Shown in pieces: positions 7,001 to 57,562 of a DNA stretch of 64,000 nt; the first letter of the stretch is position 1; the number at the start of each line of letters is the position of its first letter. The position numbers were made by a program, and so were the translations under genes. Below the pieces are notes generated by a model. That model did not search any database and was not told where the DNA came from. It was given only the letters and a program-made list of their open reading frames with translations. This stretch comes from Botryllus schlosseri (lineage: Eukaryota). The DNA is taken from NCBI GenBank assembly GCA_051294905.1, contig CM119384.1, positions 4,898,001 through 4,962,000 on the forward strand, read 5' to 3'.

Positions 7001-10000
7001 CCGCCGCAAATCATTCTATTACAAATCTTTAAACTAATATCGCGTACTGTAAAATGATTGGATGGTCATCATATTTACGTAAGACACATAAATCCGACTG
7101 TGTGGTCTCGCCATACGTTATTATCACCAAATTATGAAGTCTTTCAGATTAGGTCCGATAATGCCAACACACTTCAAATCGTGGCTATCGTGGTCGGGAT
7201 GAAAATTACGGGTATCCCGATAACGATAAGTATCCATCACTTAGACCTGGACAACTAGAAAGATTTCAGTTTTTCTAAATTAGATTAGAATTATCATTAC
7301 AGTGATACATTTTTTGCCAAATTCGTCTAGAATTATAGCTACACGTTTTCCTTTTCAAATATTATTAGAATTAGAATTACTGAATTCCTGAAGATTTGGA
7401 AATCAGAGAGAAAAAACATCAAATCAGCGTCATTAGCATGATAATGGCAAATGTACGTACAGCAAGCTTGGCTCATTTTGCACCATGTAGTTCTCCTGTA
7501 GCATTGTCAGAAAACCCAAAATTGGATTAGAATTAAAATTAGGTCAAACATGGCCTACTAGTGGTAGGCCATGGGTCAAATAAACATTCCACAAATTAGA
7601 TTAGAATTAGATTACCGACATTTCGCTCCAATTAGTGAAATTAGGCAACTAGAATGATCTAGTAACTATTTGTTTATATTTTTGGTATTTCTGATACATT
7701 TAGGCCTAGCAGAAGCCAAATTATAGGACAATTCCAGCCGAGGCTCAATCAATAGCATAGTCAACGGTCATCCCATACCCCGTAAACATAATAATGCATA
7801 TGCGGACAGTGGTTACAGGCCAATTTGCATGGTACATCACTACACAAACACCGATATGGAAATAAATCAGATGATTTGTGTGCGGGATGGAATATGTCAC
7901 ACGCGTTATTCACATCTGTATAACTATTAACCAAGCCACTCTATCAGGCACCATCCCACAGAAATAATTGAGAAACTGAGGCGGAAAAGTTGAAATTCAA
8001 CAAGGTTTCTAGGTTTATCGCATCAAAAAACGTTTACGAACGTGGATATTCGTGTTACAAGTAGTATAATTGGAATAAAGATAGACTTAGGTATACATCA
8101 CGCGCATAACATAGATATCTTGTAATCTCATACGCCTTATAAAACGCAAGCGCGCGCATGATGATACAGCCTGTGTAGGCGCACACACCGACACAACATG
8201 CAAATAAATATTGCATGCCTTGTTTTTCTCAGTCGCGCGGCGACACGCCATTGTTTACCCGACGCGGAAAAACAACTTTGTGGGACGATATGCAAACTTG
8301 AGCAAGTCTCGACAACAAAAAAATGAAACGTCACCTCCGCATCGCGCGACTTCCTTTCCTAGATTTTGCATCGTGCTAGAAAGGCATAATTTGGCGCGAG
8401 GCTTTTCGGATAATACATTGTGTACAAGTCCGTATCGTACATTTCTGAGTTGCCTGTATACATCTGTGTTGCCAATGGCAGTACCAACTTAATTACTCAT
8501 AAAAGTATAAGTACTTTGTTACAGACCACATCTGTAACTAACTGTCTTGCCAATGACGCCTGTCATCAGAATGTGGGGCCAGTGTATCTAAAAAGCCTGC
8601 AGCAAAAGTCGCAATCTGCCAATCTGGTAAAACCAAAACAAAGGTATGGGGCTTGCTATGATTTTGATTACAGCAGTCCAAACACTATGCAGAAAAAACA
8701 CACCAGACATATTAGTGCACCAGCGTGAACTAGACGTGCACAAACTATTAATATAGTTAGTTGACGGTCAGCTACTATTTTTGGTGTAGTTTTACTTCTA
8801 GTTGCGGATTTTGAAAAGTGAATAGTTCCAGTTCTAGTTCTAGTTGCGGATTTTGAAGTGTGTAGTTCTAGTTCTATAGTTGCGGATTTTGAAAAGTGCA
8901 TAGTTCTAGTTTTAGTTCTAGTTGAGGATTTTGAAAAGTGAATAGTTTCAGTTCTAGTTGCGGATTTTGAAAATTGAATGGTTCCAGTTCGAGCTGTGAG
9001 TTTTAAAAAAATGAGTACAATTCCAGTTCTAGTTGCTAGTTTTGAAAAGTGAGTAGTTCTAGTTCTAGTTGCGGATTTTGAAATCCAGTAGGTTGTGAAC
9101 TCAACTGGCGAAATACCAATTCCCTCCAGTACCCATGACGTTTGAAATTAACCAAACAATCTATACTTCTACGGTAGGTTGTGATCTTTTCGCCTCTATT
9201 GATATTTTTGTTCAAGTGCCGCATCCCCGCGTTAATTAGCTGTATTTGAACCCGCATTCTTAAGAGTCGCGGCGATTTAATTCGACTTTACAAACCGTCA
9301 TTGTCGCTCGGGTAATTGCCCGAATCACAAAACCGTTAAGATCATAACTTGAAAACAATAACATTTCTGCCAAGCGCGGCACTTGATCGCAACGAAAGTC
9401 TTTTGAAGGCGGCCCGCGTAATAAAGGTAGACAAGCATTCATTGTCGCGACCGTTGCTAGGTTTAGAAAAATAATCATGCGCGCTAATTGCTTTCATCTT
9501 TCGTGAAAACACAACAAGCGGAAAACTAGCCTCCTTTGGGCGGCCTGTATTTTTTGGATGCCTCTCGAAAATGTAACTTCGAATAGCAGTTCTCAGCTAT
9601 TTGCTGAAGATTACCCTGACGAGTGTCAGCTAAAAATATTCGGGTTCATTTCAATAGTATTCAATTGCACATTGACGTTCTGTATCTGCGAGAAGCTCTT
9701 TATATAGCAAGAACAGTTTCTAAATTCAAATTCAAGTTTGCAAAGCATGTACCGTTTGCACTGATGCCTGTCGATAGTGATCAACAATACTGAGTACAAG
9801 ACGTTATGGAATGCAAATTCACTATAGCAGGCTCAATGCGATAAAACATCGACAGCGACAAGGAACTTATGAGAGCAAACAATTTCAGCGTGGCGCCACC
9901 CTGTGGTTACACAGCAGACTTGGTCTCAACGAGATGCAGGAAATCTAATTCTAATCTGGTTTCTGATTTTCCCGAAAATACTACTGGGGAACTGTATACC

Positions 10001-37800: not shown

Positions 37801-39031
37801 CACCCACACGACGCCAATCCCGTGAAAATGACTTTATTTCGAGAGCGCTGACCACATCCTAGGACCTAGAATACTTTCGATGCTATCTATATTCGCAAGG
37901 ACATAGTAGAACCTGTCTGGCATTGTTTTTTTTTTTCTCTTTTACGACAATAATCTCGCTGTACACGCACGCACTGGTGCGTTCAAGAGTCGTATAAACC
38001 CCATATAAAACTAATACCGACAAAGGGCTTGAACTGTCAAAGATATAGGACGTGACGTACTCCGCTCATGCATATTACACACCGTTACATACGCAACATA
38101 ACAAATTAGGCGCGGTAATTCGTTTGAAAGACGGTACTAATTCTGTTGAACAAGGGGAATTAATTACGCATCGGAGCCGGTTCCTACCCGTAAGCTCTTC
38201 GGTACATACTCGAGCGAGTTCGTGATTTTAAGGCCTGCGCGCGTATTTACTGTTATGGCCCAATTACTATAAACACAGAATCATGGTTGGAGAGCTATTA
38301 CTAAACAATTTTAATCGCGCGGTTTCGCGTGTAATTCGAAGGTTTGGACAGATTGGGACTGCACACTGCACAATGTGTGTGCACAGTGAACCCAGAAATT
38401 GGGTAGTTATCGGGACCAACATGACAAGAAATCAGTTCTATTTCAAAATTATAAGGTTACAATAAAAATTGCTAACGTGTCAACTGTCAATCCCGACTTA
38501 TCAAACAGAGGCATTCAGACTCGCAAGTTAATTTATCGGAAAATGGACTGGAAAATACATTTTGCAGGCATGAGAAAGATATAATAAAGGTTCTCTTGTG
38601 CCTAAATTTTGAATGGTGGGCATTGGGCAATGAAGGTATGGAACCGGGACAATATCTCACTGTTGGAAATTCTCGCCATTTACAATTATGGTTTCGGCTA
38701 CGTCAGTGTCAACAGTTGTTTTAGATTGCATACCAATGGATCATGTCACACGCACTCGCTCATTACTCCACTCTAAATATTAGAAACGTATCTTGCGATT
38801 GTACTTATGGAAATTTAAGTTGTTGTGACCCATAACGGACGATGCTTCCATTCGGTCATCAATTCGCGTTGTAAATATATCTATCACCGACATAGACTAA
38901 TAAGATTCTTTGAAGCTCCATTCCAATGATGATGAATACTATATTGGAGCGATAGCGCTTAGCCGGTATGTAGCTTATTATCTCTCGGCACTCTGGTGCG
39001 TCTTGTGGCATTTATCAAGCGTAGTCCATAC

Positions 39032-39060
39032 CATGGCCTACTAGTTTTTAGTAGGCCATG
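39032..39060. mobile_element. P-element-like excision footprint (29 bp), TSD TCCATAC
   Basis: TCCATAC-CATGGCCTACTAGTTTTTAGTAGGCCATG-TCCATAC. Confidence 0.8.
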
Positions 39061-40534
39061 TCCATACCGAAAATTGTCAAAGAAAGGTTTCGGAATTGCA
39101 GCTCTCTCATTTCGACTAAGCAGCCTTATGACAGTCAATTTGGAATCGTTTCTCAATGCGAGCTGATACATATGACCGCTTTGCTTCGTTATCTGCTACG
39201 GTAGCGTCGGGTTGCAACGGCTATCTCTGCATATTGCGCGACTATCATCTGACTCCACTATGTACTTAATGAACCCTGCCTGAGTGGGAATGCTAGTTTT
39301 GTAGCGGAACGTTATCAGTAGATCAGCTCTGATTTGAATTCTACTATAATTCGTTATTAGAAATGGAATTGTGTTGTAGATTTTCGAATATCAGAACTAG
39401 CTCACTAACGAGGCATTACAACTTGTGTCATGGATAACGTTTTGGATAACTAAGGTCCCTGATATCCATCAAATTGATACAGCGCTTTAAAATCTACACC
39501 TGAGCTACTATGAAGAGTCCGTATGAATATTAATATCGGTATAGTTTGCTCTACGAATTTCACATTATAGCTTTTCATATCATTTTCGCCCAATATTCTG
39601 ATTCCCTACATGGTGGCGTCATCAATCTCACGCGACATAGACTACACGTGTTGCAAACGCTGTATCAGACAACTTAACCAGCTTCGGCTGACGCGATACG
39701 GACTCATATGATTCGGCAAGTTTTGCAGCTTTAAACATTCACGTTTTGCATAGCACCGAGTCATCGAAGTCGCAGCGTACAAACAACGTTGCGATTCACA
39801 ATGCATACAAGGAAGAACGTTTACAAATTGGGAAATATGATAGCCGTTCACGGGTTGAAAAACAATGACATGTCAGCCATCGTCTTGACATCGACGAATT
39901 CCCATATTAGCGGAAGCTATTATAATCAAATGATGGATTGCGGCAGAACTTCCCGGGACATTCGCATCGCGAAAATATCGAGGCTGCGCTCAAAAACCGG
40001 TCGTGTATGAGTTTTGACAAGGGCTAATTTATTGTTCCCGATGTTTCACGTTTTTTTTTTTGAGCTAACGTTAGCGGTGGCGTATTACGTCATGTATTAA
40101 GCGGTGTGAGGTATAATCAAGTCACATAGCTTGCGCACCGATTATAAACATTGAATAGTACATTGATGGGTTGCATATTCGCGCACCGTGACTAATTAGT
40201 CCTAGTTGGGGTTAAGACTTGAAGATGCAACTGTGCATTGCTTTGCTGATCCTCGCAGTAGGACATAATATCAGTAGATTTCATTTGCTGGAGAGCTGAT
40301 GAAAATTTACTCGGACTACGCTATTGTTGACAAATACTGCGACAATTGAATAGTATATTCAGATTGAAATAGACTCGCATATTTTCGGCTGCCACTCGTC
40401 AAGGGGTCATCGTCAGCAACTAGTAGAGAATCGGAAAGAACGTAGCATGTCAACAATCGTATCGCCAAAAATACTGGTACACATAAAAAACAAGATTCCG
40501 TAATTCAGGGGGTTGGGATAAACACGGCGGTGAC

Positions 40535-52326: not shown

Positions 52327-52463
52327 TCAATCCTGTTTATTTGTCTCGCTGTTGAAAAGCGGACGATCGCACATTGGACAAGTGTCCTGAATGAAAATCC
52401 ACTTCCGCAAGCAGTGAGTGTGGAACATATGCCTGCATCGCGTTTTCCTTATCTCGCCGTGTT
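52327..52463 (-). CDS. RNF139: RNF139 last exon, second half of RING-H2 and stop (frame not in ORF track)
   Basis: attttag acceptor; CRHMFHTHCLRKWIFIQDTCPMC; TGA at 52329-52327. Confidence 0.95.
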
Positions 52464-55400
52464 CTAAAATACACAAGTACGGTCAGCGGTGAAGTTATTT
52501 CTACTTTTTTCAATACTCAAGTAGCTTATGTCTACTTCCACTACTTACTAATGCTGCCATACGTCAAACTTTGTATATTATTGTCAAGTAGAAAGTATTT
52601 GGACCACTTGTCAGAGCTAGAACGTGACCAGTGTCCGCCATTAGAGTAAAGATATCTGCAATTATCACGACGCCACAATACGATAGTGGGGAGTTGGAAA
52701 ATCTGCCATTGCTAGACTGAAAATTTCGATATGCTTCTTATAGCTTACAGGCTTACATTTTCATGTTCAAGAATAGCAACGGCTGTAAATTTGGTAAAAA
52801 GTTCTGGAAACAAACACCTTTGAAAAGAACTCTAGGACGGAAGAATATACCGAAACATTTTTATAAACAGCGAAGGGTCACAAGACACATCTCCACTATG
52901 AATACTAGCCTTGACAATGAAGTACCAATCAATATACGTTCAATAGTTTAGTAGTAACTTAATATCTTCGTGGACTCAAGCCGAAGTCATACCCATCCGT
53001 CCAGGTTCTACACCACAGTATAAAGACTGCGTGGAGTATGTGGATCTGTGAGCAAAGAGTGGGAATGGGTAAAACAATGACTGCAATGCCTATTTTATAC
53101 CTAGAAACTATGCTGTAGGATAGGATGGCCGAGATTAACATATGATAGACTTCTACTCACCCATGGCCTACTAAAAACATGGCCATGACTCACCTAAGAT
53201 AAAATCTTGATAGCATATGCTACACACGTCCCTGTCTTGTTCTGGGATGTCATCCACATCCACAACAGCAAGACTCGATATCTTTGAGTTGACAAATCTT
53301 CTGTTATTGAAAGTCTTAATTCCCTCTCGAAACGTTCTGGAAAACATGATTAACTTCTGTATCTTCTGTATCAAAAGTACGACAATCTTGGACGTTCATT
53401 GAGTTCAAATTGCTCGAGTCAAATTCATCCAAGTTCAGTGGCATTGAGATGAAAAGGTGGGTTGCTAGAATGGTGCATCATGTTTTTTTTTCTTACATAA
53501 GAGCAGCACGAATAATTTTTGAGAGGATCTAATTTCAAATAATTTATGACGATGTATCTCTTATACAAGCATCCAATATTGAAAGATGTATGAACTCACC
53601 GGTAGATATTTACGTAGGCATGCATCGTCATCATGACAGCCCGCAGCCAGTTGCTCGATTCAAACATCAGTATGTAAGCCCCATTGATGAACATCACCAG
53701 GCCGCATATGAACTCGATCACGTGACTTATGGAACGTATCCAGAAGACGTAATCGTCCAAATTGATGATACCGTTGGCGTGGTACCTCGAATCCATAACA
53801 TAAAGTGCATACACCATCAACGTTGATAAAACCTATAATTACATGAGAAAATATTAAAGATTTCCAATCGGATATCAGAAATATGAAGCGGACATCTGAA
53901 GCAAGAAGATTTCACGGACTCATTACTAGCACCAGGCACAACGATGTGAATACTCGAATCCGAATCAAGTGGTCGGAGACAATTTTTTCCAATATAGAGT
54001 TATATTATACCTTAGATACCTTCTTGAAACCAAGCAAGTATATCACGGTATCTAAAACACAGCATGAAGCTACAAAAAGACGTGGATATGACATTTCTCA
54101 CGTAGGGTTACCATATTCTGAGATCGGGGAAAGAGGGCACTTTTTACAAATCACAAAACTTATACTAGCGAGGTCATTACGCCAACAGGACTCCCCCGAA
54201 GACCCACTTTAATGTAGTTTTCTAGTCATTCTTGCCGTCAAAATCTGGTATGAGCGTCATTTACAGCGTTTTTTTAGTTGTGCCTGTACTATCACCTGGC
54301 TGTCAGTGCTATAAAGCAGGACGAAGTGTAAAAAAAGAGGATATTTGGGCGTCCTCGGATGGCATTTTCGATTTCTTCAAAAAGGAGGACAATACCTCTT
54401 CGGGGAGGACGTATGCTATGCCTACACTTCTGTGAGGTTGTGATCAACCCTGCAGCATTCTGACCGAGCGCAATGAAATAGGTACCGTACTAAATTATGT
54501 CTAATGTCTTGAATAACTGGCATAATTGCGTCACGATTGCAAAAAATGAAACATATTTGAACTCAAGTTGACTAGTCCTACTCATTACAAGAGCAAAAAT
54601 CACAACAGTAATAGAAAATGCATAGCCTAATAACCAGAGCTTTATTGGCGTCAGACGACATAGCACAGTTTTGGAGTCATTATTATTGATCAGCTAAAAT
54701 CAGAGGCGGTCAGTAACGAAGTATTATACTTTTTCAGAGTAGGCCTACTCAAGTAGGTAATACTATTCACTTAAGCGGTTATGATATTTGACTACTTTTA
54801 GACTTCTTCTTTACAGTAGGCCTATATTGTGCAAAACTAGGCAATACTTGCTTTTAGTCGTACTTGAGTTGAAATTTATGCGTCAATTCTACTTGAGTAC
54901 TAAGAATAACTACTTGACCATATCCGGTCAAAAAACTCCATCTTAATCTCTCACCTTGACCACCAACTCCAGATTAAACGCAGTGAGAGCGATCATCCAT
55001 GTAGACAGACGCTTTGTAGTTAGCAGCCAATAGCACATCCCACTTGGTAACGCCAAAAGAATCAAACATATCAACAACGGGTTCACGTGCTTCCGTAACG
55101 GTATATGACTTTGCGGACTGATAGTCATCAGGACAGGGTGAACGATATCCAGACAAAAGTGAAGAATTGCGGACAGCAACAAAAATGAATTCCTGTACAA
55201 CCGCACGATTCGTTTCCATGGCGGTAGCACACTCAAACGTGTTTGTATCGCTAGAAGGCAAAACAATATGGAGGACATCATTCCCAAAGCCTCTCCTTGA
55301 GCGAGATCATTTCCTCCTATAAACTCGTGTAGCACAGTCCCGGCATAAAATCCAATCACAGACATCGCAGCTCCCACGGAAAACGAGGACAATAATGATT

Positions 55401-57562
55401 CGGTCAGCATAGCGCACATGCCTTCCAATAGAGTTAAATTTTTAGAGTCCTTCCTACTGTCAAAATAACCTTCGATACCGTCCCAATCTTCCCAATATTG
55501 ACTCTGTATCGGTTTGGGATGGTCCGAGCTGAAGAAAAAGTAATATAGTCCACTGTTCGCCGATGGATCATACTCGTCTGTCGTGAAAGACCTATCCTGG
55601 CCGTACAGACTTAGCATTCCCAGTATACAACGGTATATAAAAAAAAGTCTCAACACTGAAGGTACACGGCATTCAACCCACGTATCTTGAATAGCGGTTA
55701 TGAAATCGTCCAACACGGCTTCATATCCGTTCCTTCTGAGAAAGAACAGGTGAGCCAGACCTGGCCGTATCTCGTCTGCTTTCTTCACGAATAAAATCAA
55801 CACCGGTAGCTCCGATATTAAAATTACGAAGTTCAATATCCACGTGGAATCGGTCAGCATGAGCGACCACGCGGGACTTGTGTATAAGATTGCTGACAGC
55901 GGCGACAACGCTTCGTCCAAAAGCACCAAAATCAGCCAGTGACACACTTGTAGCGCGGCGAAGCACAAGGCTACTTTTGCGGTAAAATCGAGCTGAAGAG
56001 AAATATTTATGAGGTTTTAAAGCGGATAAACCATACAGTATCAAATTCATCCTGTAGGATAAAAATCTCTAATTTAAAAACTATAATCCCCCCTCAACGT
56101 TCAAATTTCAAGTTTACTAACACCGATGCCTGGGTATTTGTTTTATACCAAATATGGTCAATTTGATCAGACATTCAAGTAGGCACCACAGTACTTTTCA
56201 TTCTGAATGCTAATAGGATGGCATACTACATAGGCAAATACTATACCGACAATATAGTATAGAGGTAGAGGTAGATCATCTGGCTTCTTGTTTGATAAGT
56301 AACATATTCGAAACCCAGCCAAAGACTCCAGAATTGGTATTCCCTGTTCATTACTTCCCCACTACGTGGTAGACAATCTAGGATAGTGTGGTGCGGGTAA
56401 ACGATGGTGCTGACTCGAATATGCTCCTTCGAATCTCCATCATCCAAACAACTTCGACTCGTGCAGTTATCAGTATTTTTATGATAGTTTAAGTTACTGC
56501 TTTTAAACACTCCTAATTGAATGAATGGGGAAAAAAATAAGCCACAGCAAACTTTGGTAGTAGACCAATGTAAATAGAGCCTATCATTCGAAAAATCTCC
56601 CTGCGTCAAATCTACACAAGGAAAGTTTGAGTAAATACATGCAGACATCAAACGATGGAATATTTTTCAACCCACCTCACTGGGCACCAACATCTCATTG
56701 TTCCACATATTTTTCATAATAATGGATATCGCAGGTTGAGTATGATTCTGTTCACCGTAGTAATGTCCATGTATTACGTTGATTGTCGAGAAGTTCCATC
56801 CTATTGCTGCTAGGCTCAAAGTCACCGCTGCAAGGAGCCGGTATAGCTTCGAAATTATACCAGGCTCACAGGTGAAGACGCAAATGCAAAGAATTCCAAC
56901 TGTTGACAAATGAAGTACATTTAAACTAAGTTAGGGACCAGCATGTTCCATCAAAATACAAGTGGAGAATAATCATGCGAGATAGTGTAATGGTTATGCG
57001 TCCAGCTTCTCGATCGGTAGGTCGTGGGTTCAATCCCCGTCCGGGTCAGACCAAAGACTCTAAAACTGGTATCCGCGGCTATCCAGCTAGGCGCTCAGCA
57101 TCCATGGGTAGCGTGGAGGAGAAAAATACGGTGGTGCAGACTAGATGACCTTGCTTAAAGGTCGTATCGCATCTCCATCGTCAAAGCATCTCGATGGTGC
57201 CGGCGAAAATAAATCTGATCTCTCTCTCTCTCTCTCTCATGCAGCAGTTGAATTGGCGAAATTAGTAAGCCCTATGAGAGCTGCCTGTAATTTCCCAAGT
57301 TTGTTATTTTTGTTACTTGCTCGCCTTGCTATAATCCTATAGTTTTTATGATGGCGATGAATTACGTTCTAGCTGATAAGTGTATTTTTTAGCTACACAC
57401 ACACCTTTTAATATTCTACTTACGTATAACATTGATCATATATCCGGTGTAGCCATCAGGTTCCCAAACGCCCACATATTGTATCGAGATTCTATCGGAT
57501 AGGATTCCATCAAAAGCCACCAAGATCGGCAGGCGCAGCAGATCAGCCTTTATAAACCCCAT
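52327..57562 (-). CDS. RNF139: RNF139/TRC8-family (RNF139/RNF145) multi-pass ER membrane RING-H2 E3 ubiquitin ligase, 637 aa, 6 coding exons
   Basis: Exons 57562-57424, 56899-56676, 55992-54955, 53832-53600, 53336-53194, 52463-52327 (1914 bp, all GT..AG, phases compatible). Motifs LLRLPILVAFDGIL, QDTWVECRVPSVLRLF, LDDYVFWIRS, MHAYVNIY, RING-H2 CSIC...CRHMFHTHCLRKWIFIQDTCPMC. RNF139 versus RNF145 not formally resolved. Confidence 0.93.
53162..53187. mobile_element. P-element-like excision footprint (26 bp), TSD ACTCACC = duplicated RNF139 splice donor
   Basis: ACTCACC-CATGGCCTACTAAAAACATGGCCATG-ACTCACC. Confidence 0.8.
54955..55992 (-). CDS. RNF139: RNF139 large exon, TRC8 N-terminal transmembrane (sterol-sensing-like) domain
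   Basis: 1038 bp open frame, many hydrophobic segments, ctcttcag acceptor, AAG|GTGAGA donor. Confidence 0.95.
56979..57236 (+). mobile_element. tRNA-derived SINE in RNF139 intron 1 (antisense), TSD TCATGC
   Basis: Collinear with the 16382-16632 copy; A/B boxes; (CT)n tail. Confidence 0.88.
57424..57562 (-). CDS. RNF139: RNF139 coding exon 1 (MGFIKADLLRLP...; not in ORF track)
   Basis: ATG at 57562, C|GTAAGT donor, resembles TRC8 N-terminal ALRVPCLYIIDAIF. Confidence 0.85.

What the first reader, a model, noticed from the sequence alone, without database searches (positions are those of the whole stretch)
53155..53194. Transposon scar duplicated the RNF139 splice donor inside the RING domain, creating a poison alternative donor
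Seen: the TSD is G|GTGAGT on the minus strand, the donor of the exon ending CSICYQDFIL. Two identical donors now lie 33 nt apart. The proximal donor gives an intact RING-H2. The distal donor adds GESWPCF then TAG, removing the last six zinc ligands. Inference: a potential NMD-sensitive or RING-less dominant-negative TRC8 isoform, and an example of a TSD rescuing a splice site after insertion.
Basis: partly seen in the sequence, partly recalled or inferred. Interest (0 to 1): 0.78.

Follow-up and report, generated by a model that had tools for sequence, protein, structure and literature searches.

The report
Transposon scar duplicating a splice donor
A P-type jumping gene once landed exactly on a splice donor inside the RING finger of a tunicate TRC8-like ubiquitin ligase gene and later left, leaving a 33-base scar that carries a second copy of the donor. 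The transcripts seen so far use only the original donor, so the scar is real but probably harmless.

Summary
On the minus strand the exon ending CSICYQDFIL stops at G|GTGAGT (53194|53193). A 26-bp unit with 7-nt inverted ends follows (53187-53162), then a second GGTGAGT (53161-53155).

The transposon-scar reading is strongly supported.
- The 26-mer is 7 nt of one end, one filler A and 18 nt of the other end of a young P-superfamily element present in this genome.
- All 18 fetched copies have perfect 7-bp target duplications and near-identical inverted repeats of at least 50 bp.
- One 3.6-kb copy carries an intact 852-aa THAP plus P-type RNase H transposase.
- Well over a hundred such short scars exist genome-wide, and none of the 60 sampled keeps more than 18 nt of an end.
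- This scan had already flagged P-type scars elsewhere in this genome.

The "poison donor" reading is not supported so far.
- One assembled transcript and the single spanning raw read use the upstream donor. Nothing uses the downstream one, though coverage is very thin.
- The in-frame TAG lies only 10 nt before the would-be last junction, so classical junction-dependent NMD is not expected.
- By U1 pairing the duplicate donor is as strong as the original, so minor use remains possible.

The intron is ancestral, at the same codon phase in two related tunicates. Three haplotypes carry the scar.

Verdict: an ordinary but clean example.

The parts
53188..53194 (-). Upstream copy of the 7-bp target-site duplication GGTGAGT. 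It is the working 5' splice site: G(53194)|GT(53193-53192).
   Evidence: Searches give the sequence. The joint 52463|53194 appears in transcript contig X6 (depth 53) and in one X23 read. U1 duplex energy is -10.6 kcal/mol.
53181..53187 (-). First 7 nt (CATGGCC) of one terminal inverted repeat of the P-type element.
   Evidence: Matches TIR positions 1-7 of all 18 fetched copies. Retention analysis.
53180..53180 (-). A single filler nucleotide (A) at the repair joint. It matches neither TIR at this position.
   Evidence: reads the scar as left 7, right 18, filler 1. At sister loci the same position varies: A, T or G.
53162..53179 (-). Last 18 nt (TGTTTTTAGTAGGCCATG) of the other terminal inverted repeat. 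This is the maximum amount retained in any scar of the family.
   Evidence: Of the 60 sampled scars plus this one, 13 retain exactly 18 nt and none retains more.
53155..53161 (-). Downstream copy of the duplication GGTGAGT. It is a duplicate, so far unused, 5' splice site: G(53161)|GT.
   Evidence: U1 duplex energy is -12.0 kcal/mol. No joint at 53161 appears.
53171..53173 (-). In-frame TAG that would end the protein after GESWPCF if the downstream donor were used. It lies 10 nt before that donor.
   Evidence: ORF 53171..53374. Alternative splice product.
53194..53336 (-). Penultimate coding exon, ending with the first Cys pair of the RING-H2 (CSIC).
   Evidence: Pieces of transcript contig X6 record 11. 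Translation.
52464..53193 (-). Last intron, 730 nt, GT..AG, phase 1. Its first 39 nt are 6 nt of the upstream duplicate, the 26-nt remnant and the 7-nt downstream duplicate.
   Evidence: Joint 'skips 730, CT..AC'. The same intron position and phase occur in relatives L036 and L097.
52327..52463 (-). Coding part of the last exon. It carries the remaining six zinc ligands of the RING-H2 and the stop codon.
   Evidence: Pfam zf-rbx1 and zf-RING_2 hits. Translation.
53600..53830 (-). Exon encoding the end of the TRC8_N membrane domain.
   Evidence: X6 record 11. PF13705, E 2.1e-23.
54953..55994 (-). Large exon encoding most of the TRC8_N domain. Further 5' exon(s) lie upstream and were not mapped.
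   Evidence: X6 record 11, with a loose end beyond 55994. PF13705, E 1.1e-39.

Best explanation
A cut-and-paste transposon of the P superfamily (THAP plus P-type RNase H transposase, 7-bp target duplication) inserted into the germline at the first bases of the last intron of a TRC8-family RING-H2 ubiquitin ligase gene. It duplicated the 7 bp G|GTGAGT.

The copy next to the exon kept the 5' splice site intact, so the gene went on splicing with the element inside the intron. The element later excised.

As in the Drosophila P element, the transposase cuts one strand well inside each inverted repeat, here about 17-18 nt in. Each flank therefore kept a single-stranded tail of element sequence. End joining fused a tail trimmed to 7 nt with a full 18-nt tail plus one filler A. 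The result is 26 bp of element sequence between the two target-site copies, a 33-bp net gain.

Today the scar sits at the start of the intron. The upstream donor is the one used and gives the conserved RING-H2. The downstream twin is a strong donor by sequence but is at most a minor site. The scar is most likely neutral or nearly so.

Shown: the scar anatomy, the family, its transposase, the target-site motif, the 18-nt ceiling, use of the upstream donor and the ancestral intron. Inferred: the order of insertion and excision, the repair route and neutrality.
For: - **Family ends.** The 26-mer differs from the family's right end only at the joint. About 70 genomic hits of the end sequence occur in minus/plus pairs 1.3-11 kb apart.
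- **Target duplications.** All 18 fetched copies have perfect 7-bp duplications and near-identical inverted repeats of at least 50 bp starting CATGGCCTACTAAAAACACGGCC.
- **Transposase.** Copy L012 has an intact 852-aa ORF with THAP (PF05485, E 1.6e-13) and the TNP-like RNase H N domain (PF21787, E 3.5e-12). It also hits the P transposase structure 6p5a at E 1.4e-4.
- **Scars genome-wide.** There are 240 strand matches to short CATGGCC...AGTAGGCCATG remnants and none in the reversed-pattern control. Of 60 sampled, 36 have perfect and 13 one-mismatch 7-bp duplications.
- **Retention ceiling.** Retention never exceeds 18 nt. The published P element stagger is 17 nt (PMC7776569).
- **Recurrence.** The identical 26-mer sits at three other loci, each with its own 7-bp duplication.
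- **Target site.** The rebuilt empty site fits the family's palindromic target motif. It scores 5.1 bits, against a family median of 4.7, and ranks at the 99.6th percentile of random window sites.
- **Transcripts.** The transcript contig and one read use 53194|52463.
- **Conserved product.** The upstream-donor product keeps the 15-residue C2-C3 spacing seen in the Ciona savignyi homologue.
- **Ancestral intron.** The intron lies at the same codon and phase in two related tunicate contigs that lack any remnant.
- **Not recent.** Two further haplotypes, 3-5% divergent, from another sample also carry the scar (X5 records 4 and 5).
Against: - No empty-site allele or close sister species was available, so 'insertion then excision' rests on anatomy and family statistics, not on a before/after pair.
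- The single A at the joint is not explained by either end.
- Neutrality is not shown. The downstream donor pairs with U1 at least as well as the upstream one (-12.0 versus -10.6 kcal/mol).
- From memory of splice-site competition studies, when two strong donors compete the one nearer the acceptor often wins, so some use would not be surprising.
- RNA coverage was one spanning raw read plus one assembly, and assemblies drop rare variants.
Confidence: 0.8

Rival explanations
1. The duplicated downstream donor is really used in a meaningful share of transcripts. It yields either an unproductive (decayed) mRNA or a RING-less TRC8 protein ending in GESWPCF, so the scar lowers or regulates ligase output.
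For: - The downstream site is a full-consensus donor (UGG|GUGAGUAG) with U1 duplex energy -12.0 kcal/mol, against -10.6 for the upstream site.
- It lies only 33 nt away in the same intron.
- The frame and stop are as claimed.
- Efficient decay could hide the isoform.
- RNA sampling was thin.
Against: - No junction 53161|52463 appears in a transcript assembly in which the gene's spliced contig has depth 53, nor in two raw RNA runs.
- The stop is 10 nt from the would-be last junction, so classical junction-dependent NMD should not act. The isoform should then be visible if it were made.
- The scar is carried by three divergent haplotypes, so it is not obviously harmful.
- The remnant can fold into a 7-8-bp stem that ties up positions -3/-2 of the downstream donor (prediction only).
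Confidence: 0.15
2. The 26-bp unit is not an excision scar. It is a very small internally deleted element, made once by abortive gap repair and then inserted here as such by the family's transposase.
For: - The identical 26-mer occurs at four loci, each with its own 7-bp duplication.
- It has 7-nt inverted ends.
Against: - Recurrent identical remnants are the rule for this family. The 19-, 22- and 25-bp classes were seen 7, 6 and 5 times among 60 loci.
- Remnants form a continuous length series of 19-39 bp with a hard 18-nt ceiling per end, as expected of repair products.
- One end of the 26-mer has only 7 nt of the repeat.
- P-type transposases need internal binding sites beyond the terminal repeat (PMC7776569).
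Confidence: 0.04
3. Chance, or a local slippage duplication unrelated to any transposon.
For: A 7-bp repeat 33 nt apart is short. At genome scale such repeats do arise by chance.
Against: - The interior is 25 of 26 nt accounted for by the two ends of a resident active family.
- 0 of 20 shuffled windows show the anatomy, against 3 in the real window, all of this family.
- The site fits the family's target motif.
Confidence: 0.01

Closest known systems
Drosophila P element excision footprints (staggered 17-nt cleavage; target duplication plus remnants of both 31-bp inverted repeats)
   Same: - THAP plus P-type RNase H transposase.
- Termini begin with CATG.
- Palindromic target-site preference.
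- Scars consist of the target duplication plus up to about 17-18 nt of each end, joined with microhomology or filler.
Supported, and by PMC7776569.
   Different: - The target duplication is 7 bp, not 8 bp.
- The inverted repeats are at least 50 bp, not 31 bp.
- The ceiling is 18 nt rather than the published 17.
- The host is a tunicate.
- The transposase is only about 21-23% identical to other P-family transposases of the same genome.
P-homologous elements and THAP9 genes of Ciona and zebrafish (Kimbacher et al. 2009; Pdre elements; both as cited in PMC7776569 and PMC10983969)
   Same: P-superfamily elements in chordates outside insects. The nearest named homologues of the host gene are from Ciona.
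   Different: The family here is young, with an intact single-ORF autonomous copy and many scars. Its relation to the published Ciona elements was not tested.
Splice-site changes caused by plant transposon insertions and their footprints (maize Ds, dSpm and Mu alleles), recalled from memory
   Same: A cut-and-paste element in or next to a splice site. The target duplication or footprint supplies extra splice-site sequence.
   Different: In those cases altered splicing was demonstrated genetically. Here only the original donor has been seen in RNA.
Tandem alternative 5' splice sites and unproductive splicing coupled to NMD ('poison' isoforms)
   Same: Two consensus donors a short distance apart. 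The downstream one brings in an in-frame stop.
   Different: No use of the second donor was observed. The stop is 10 nt from the last junction, so the defining NMD geometry is not met. The duplicated donor is absent from both relatives examined.

Membership tests
P-superfamily excision footprint | Flanked by a direct repeat of the family's target-duplication length | tested here: met
   A perfect 7-bp repeat. The family makes 7-bp duplications in 18 of 18 full copies. Of 60 sampled scars, 49 have at most one mismatch.
P-superfamily excision footprint | Interior made of the outermost bases of both inverted repeats of an identifiable resident element | tested here: met
   7 nt plus 18 nt of the CATGGCCTACTAAAAACAC... 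ends, with 1 filler nt.
P-superfamily excision footprint | The element family encodes a THAP plus P-type (RNase H-like) transposase | tested here: met
   L012 has an 852-aa ORF with PF05485 (E 1.6e-13) and PF21787 (E 3.5e-12). It hits PDB 6p5a at E 1.4e-4.
P-superfamily excision footprint | Retained end sequence no longer than the staggered cut (about 17 nt in Drosophila) | tested here: met
   The maximum retention is 18 nt in the 60 sampled scars plus this one, and none is longer. This scar retains 18 and 7.
P-superfamily excision footprint | An empty or occupied site in an allele or sister species showing the before or after state | tested here: inconclusive
   The other sample (X5) carries the scar on both haplotypes. 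The relatives found are too distant (67% and 58% residue identity in this exon); they have the same intron without a remnant. Exact-ORF look-ups for both alleles were blank.
Alternative 5' splice site with NMD-coupled (poison) outcome | Consensus donor sequence able to pair with U1 | tested here: met
   UGG|GUGAGUAG, duplex energy -12.0 kcal/mol against -10.6 for the used donor.
Alternative 5' splice site with NMD-coupled (poison) outcome | Junction reads or transcripts that use the site | tested here: not met
   No joint at 53161 in two raw RNA runs or in one transcript assembly. Only 53194|52463 was seen. Coverage was very thin, so this is weak negative evidence.
Alternative 5' splice site with NMD-coupled (poison) outcome | Premature stop more than 50-55 nt upstream of the last exon junction | tested here: not met
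   The TAG at 53173-53171 is 10 nt from the 53161 junction. Junction-independent NMD cannot be assessed with these tools.
TRC8 (RNF139/RNF145) family of membrane RING-H2 ubiquitin ligases | TRC8_N multi-pass membrane domain | tested here: met
   PF13705, E 1.1e-39 and 2.1e-23 on two exons.
TRC8 (RNF139/RNF145) family of membrane RING-H2 ubiquitin ligases | C-terminal RING-H2 (C3H2C3) with family spacing | tested here: met
   The spliced product reads CSIC-x15-CRH-x2-H-x2-C-x10-CPMC, with the same C2-C3 spacing as the Ciona savignyi homologue. Pfam RING-H2 hits on the last exon.
TRC8 (RNF139/RNF145) family of membrane RING-H2 ubiquitin ligases | Orthology to RNF139 rather than RNF145 | not tested
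   No tree was built. The nearest named proteins are unnamed 'RING-type domain-containing' Ciona entries.

The most novel reading that the evidence does not exclude
The scar's second donor is used in a regulated way, for instance tissue-specific or stress-specific. It would produce a stable RING-less TRC8 protein that escapes NMD because its stop lies 10 nt from the last junction. A transposon footprint would then have created a new, lineage-specific regulatory isoform of an ER ubiquitin ligase.
Probability: 0.07. Interest if true: 0.55.

Novelty: new member of a known kind. Interest (0 to 1): 0.3.

Why it matters
- It is a clean, fully dissected example of how a target-site duplication lets a transposon land on an essential splice signal without destroying it, and of what remains after the element leaves.
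- The wider value lies in the family rather than in this locus. It is a young, probably still active P-type element in a tunicate, with an intact transposase, a clear palindromic target motif and very many scars.
- The 18-nt ceiling on those scars reads out the enzyme's staggered cut without any biochemistry.
- For the gene itself the likely consequence is nil. If the second donor were used it would remove six of the eight zinc ligands of the RING.

Tried and rejected
- **Chance or slippage origin.** Rejected.
- **CpG decay as the source of the joint A.** The idea was that the A arose from a CATGGCCGTG joint. I consider it unlikely: the mirror product CATGGCTGTG was not among the hits with up to 3 mismatches, while A recurs at five loci.
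- **A subfamily whose repeat has CATGGCC at positions 17-23.** No such copy was found.
- **A target preference that mimics 5' splice sites.** The motif is T-N2-GTTSAAC-N2-A. It is not donor-like, and no other sampled site looked like a donor.
- **Pfam on fragments of non-autonomous copies.** No hits. The transposase was found only after tblastn against other P copies led to L012.
- **Search by the exon ORF for an empty-site allele.** It returned only one distant relative.
- **The closest relative.** Its contig gave no DNA and ends before the RING exon.
- **ESM Atlas search of the large exon.** No usable hit; one search failed on a frame error of mine.
- **Read laying.** It could be done only once. 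The bulk RNA runs gave one spanning read, so minor use of the second donor could not be measured.

Full report
**1. What is in the sequence**

Read on the minus strand, 53220-53150 runs as follows:
- ...TGT AGC ATA TGC TAT CAA GAT TTT ATC TTA G|GTGAGT
- CATGGCC A TGTTTTTAGTAGGCCATG
- G GTGAGT AGAAG...

The repeat finder gives ACTCACC at 53155-53161 and at 53188-53194, 33 nt start to start. It also gives a perfect 7-nt inverted repeat CATGGCC/GGCCATG at the two ends of the 26 bp in between.

The ORF list shows the frame ...DRDVCSICYQDFIL GESWPCF stop, ending at 53171.

A scan of the whole window for this anatomy found three cases: 7542-7580, 39025-39067 and this one. The anatomy was a 7-bp direct repeat abutting a 14-60-bp unit with 7-nt inverted ends. 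All three begin CATGGCCTAC or CATGGCC. Twenty Markov-shuffled windows gave none.

**2. The gene and its splicing**

The minus-strand exons carry a TRC8_N domain (PF13705, E 1.1e-39 and 2.1e-23). The last exon carries RING-H2 matches.

Laying one transcript assembly (X6) on the region gives these exons:
- 54953-55994
- 53600-53830
- 53194-53336
- an exon ending at 52463

All introns are GT..AG, and more 5' sequence lies upstream.

Joining these exons gives a 516-residue open frame ending ...CSICYQDFILEHGEIRKTRCRHMFHTHCLRKWIFIQDTCPMC..., a complete C3H2C3 RING-H2. Its C2-C3 spacing of 15 residues equals that of the Ciona savignyi homologue.

The nearest named proteins are from Ciona, so the genome is a tunicate. 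I cannot name the species.

Two related tunicate contigs have an intron at the same codon and phase. L036 reads GAC G|GTATGG and L097 reads TTA G|GTAAGC. Neither carries a remnant or a duplicated donor. The intron is therefore old and the 33 bp are lineage-specific.

**3. The 26 bp come from a resident P-type transposon**

A search of the window's own 495-Mb genome with the 26-mer, allowing three mismatches, gave two kinds of hit:
- four exact copies;
- about 70 hits of TAAGGCCGTGTTTTTAGTAGGCCATG, lying in minus/plus pairs 1.3-11 kb apart.

I fetched eighteen such pairs. Every one is an element with near-identical inverted repeats of at least 50 bp, starting CATGGCCTACTAAAAACACGGCCTTACAG, and a perfect 7-bp target duplication.

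Most copies are non-autonomous. tblastn with other P transposases of the genome pointed to L012 (G000:C4:15356301-15359902, 3.6 kb). L012 holds one intact 852-residue ORF with these matches:
- a THAP domain (E 1.6e-13);
- the TNP-like RNase H N-terminal domain (E 3.5e-12);
- a weak but specific sequence match to the Drosophila P transposase structure 6p5a (E 1.4e-4).

The family is therefore a P-superfamily element. Judging by identical ends and an intact gene, it is young.

**4. It is a scar, one of very many**

The pattern CATGGCC-N(0-30)-AGTAGGCCATG has 240 strand matches in the genome. The reversed control has none.

I fetched 60 of these loci. Thirty-six have perfect and 13 one-mismatch 7-bp duplications.

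The remnants are 19-39 bp long. Measured against the repeat, the longer retained end is 11-18 nt. Thirteen of the 61 scars examined (the 60 sampled plus this one) retain exactly 18 nt and none exceeds 18.

That ceiling is what a staggered cut about 17-18 nt inside each end would produce. The Drosophila enzyme cuts 17 nt inside (PMC7776569).

The scar at 53162-53187 is 7 nt of one end, one filler A and the full 18 nt of the other end.

The same 26-mer lies at three other loci, each with its own duplication: GTAGGAG, AGGGTTC/ACGGTTC and GGTGTAT. Such recurrence is normal here. The 19-, 22- and 25-bp classes recur 7, 6 and 5 times among the 60 loci.

From 57 sites with perfect duplications I derived a palindromic target motif. 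T stands three bases before the duplication and A three bases after it, each in 80% of sites, around a GTTSAAC-like core. The rebuilt empty site of this locus, TTATCTTA-GGTGAGT-AGAAGTCT, scores 5.1 bits. That is above the family median of 4.7 and at the 99.6th percentile of random window positions.

The motif is not donor-like. The hit on a splice donor is a coincidence that selection could tolerate, not a targeting preference.

**5. How it most likely happened**

The element inserted with its staggered 7-bp target cut spanning G|GTGAGT. After gap filling, the exon was still followed by GTGAGT, and positions -3 to +6 of the donor were unchanged. The element, then part of the intron, was followed by a second GGTGAGT.

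Excision left two 3' tails of element sequence. End joining kept 7 nt and 18 nt and added one base.

The anatomy and the family statistics are shown. The order of events and the repair route are inferred.

**6. Is the second donor used?**

By sequence it could be. Pairing of positions -3 to +8 with the U1 5' end gives -10.6 kcal/mol for the upstream site (UAG|GUGAGUCA) and -12.0 for the downstream site (UGG|GUGAGUAG).

From memory of work on competing 5' splice sites, when two strong donors compete the one nearer the acceptor is often chosen. Use of the downstream site would therefore not be odd.

The data show otherwise, as far as they go:
- The joint 52463|53194 is in the X6 transcript contig (depth 53) and in one raw read of X23.
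- No joint at 53161 appears in X6, X23 or X37.
- The raw runs gave only one spanning read, and assemblies drop rare forms. A minor isoform cannot be excluded.

The 'NMD-sensitive' inference is weak. The TAG at 53173-53171 is 10 nt upstream of the would-be last junction, and the classical rule needs more than 50-55 nt. If the isoform were made in quantity it should be stable and visible. Junction-independent NMD is a caveat I cannot test.

The remnant is predicted to fold into a 7-8-bp stem that includes positions -3 and -2 of the downstream donor. This might handicap that donor, but it is only a prediction.

**7. Age and frequency**

Contigs of another sample (X5) give two haplotypes across 53003-53213. 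They differ from the window at 6 and 11 of about 211 positions, and one has an extra C inside the scar. Neither has a 33-bp gap. Three distinct haplotypes therefore carry the scar. It is not a private or very recent event and is not obviously harmful.

**8. Verdict**

'Transposon scar whose target duplication is the splice donor' is supported with strong, independent, genome-wide evidence. 'Poison alternative donor' is unsupported and partly contradicted.

The scan had already noted P-type scars with 7-bp duplications elsewhere in this genome (s1-246863, s1-291514), and several in this window (s1-240488). My analysis of this particular family agrees with the roughly 18-nt cut proposed there.

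This is a new member of a known kind. It is a neat textbook case and of modest interest by itself.

Noticed in passing
window 7542-7580 and 39025-39067: Two more scars of the same CATGGCC family in this window, each with a perfect 7-bp duplication (GGTCAAA and TCCATAC). Their remnants are 25 bp and 29 bp.
   Followed up: partly
L012 (G000:C4:15356301-15359902), ORF L012:839-3397:+: An apparently autonomous 3.6-kb P-type element with one uninterrupted 852-aa THAP plus RNase H-like transposase ORF, perfect ends and a 7-bp duplication (GTCCCAT). About 34 copies in the genome share almost identical ends, so the family may still be active.
   Followed up: partly
57 insertion sites of the family (loci L001-L096): A clear palindromic target motif. 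T stands 3 bases before the 7-bp duplication and A 3 bases after it, each in 80% of sites, around a GTTSAAC-like core. It is reminiscent of the palindromic target model for the Drosophila P element.
   Followed up: yes
genome-wide: At least 120 further matches to the P transposase family PF12017, several within open frames of 792-813 codons. They belong to other P families only about 21-23% identical to the L012 protein. This genome is unusually rich in P-type elements.
   Followed up: no
L015:3086-5665 (minus strand): One copy of the family carries a foreign 859-aa ORF whose only weak hit is a helix-turn-helix domain. It is probably a nested element or a captured gene.
   Followed up: no
window 54110-54511 and 54646-54779: A high-copy repeat inside the gene's large intron. 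Summed contig depth in the DNA-like run reaches about 6000 against about 80 nearby. The repeat also attracts RNA reads, most of which continue into unrelated sequence.
   Followed up: no
window 53166 (+ strand), inside the scar: One haplotype of another sample has an extra C in the scar (CATGGCC read as CATGGCCC on the + strand). This is either a small polymorphism within the remnant or an assembly error.
   Followed up: no
L036:4031-4045: In a related tunicate the same intron begins GTATGGCCACAC. It shares the 7-mer ATGGCCA with the scar region. This is probably coincidence and was not examined further.
   Followed up: no
window 52433: Ten reads of bulk RNA run X23 end here and continue into template-switch oligo and adapter sequence. 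This is a library artefact that inflates depth in the last exon.
   Followed up: no
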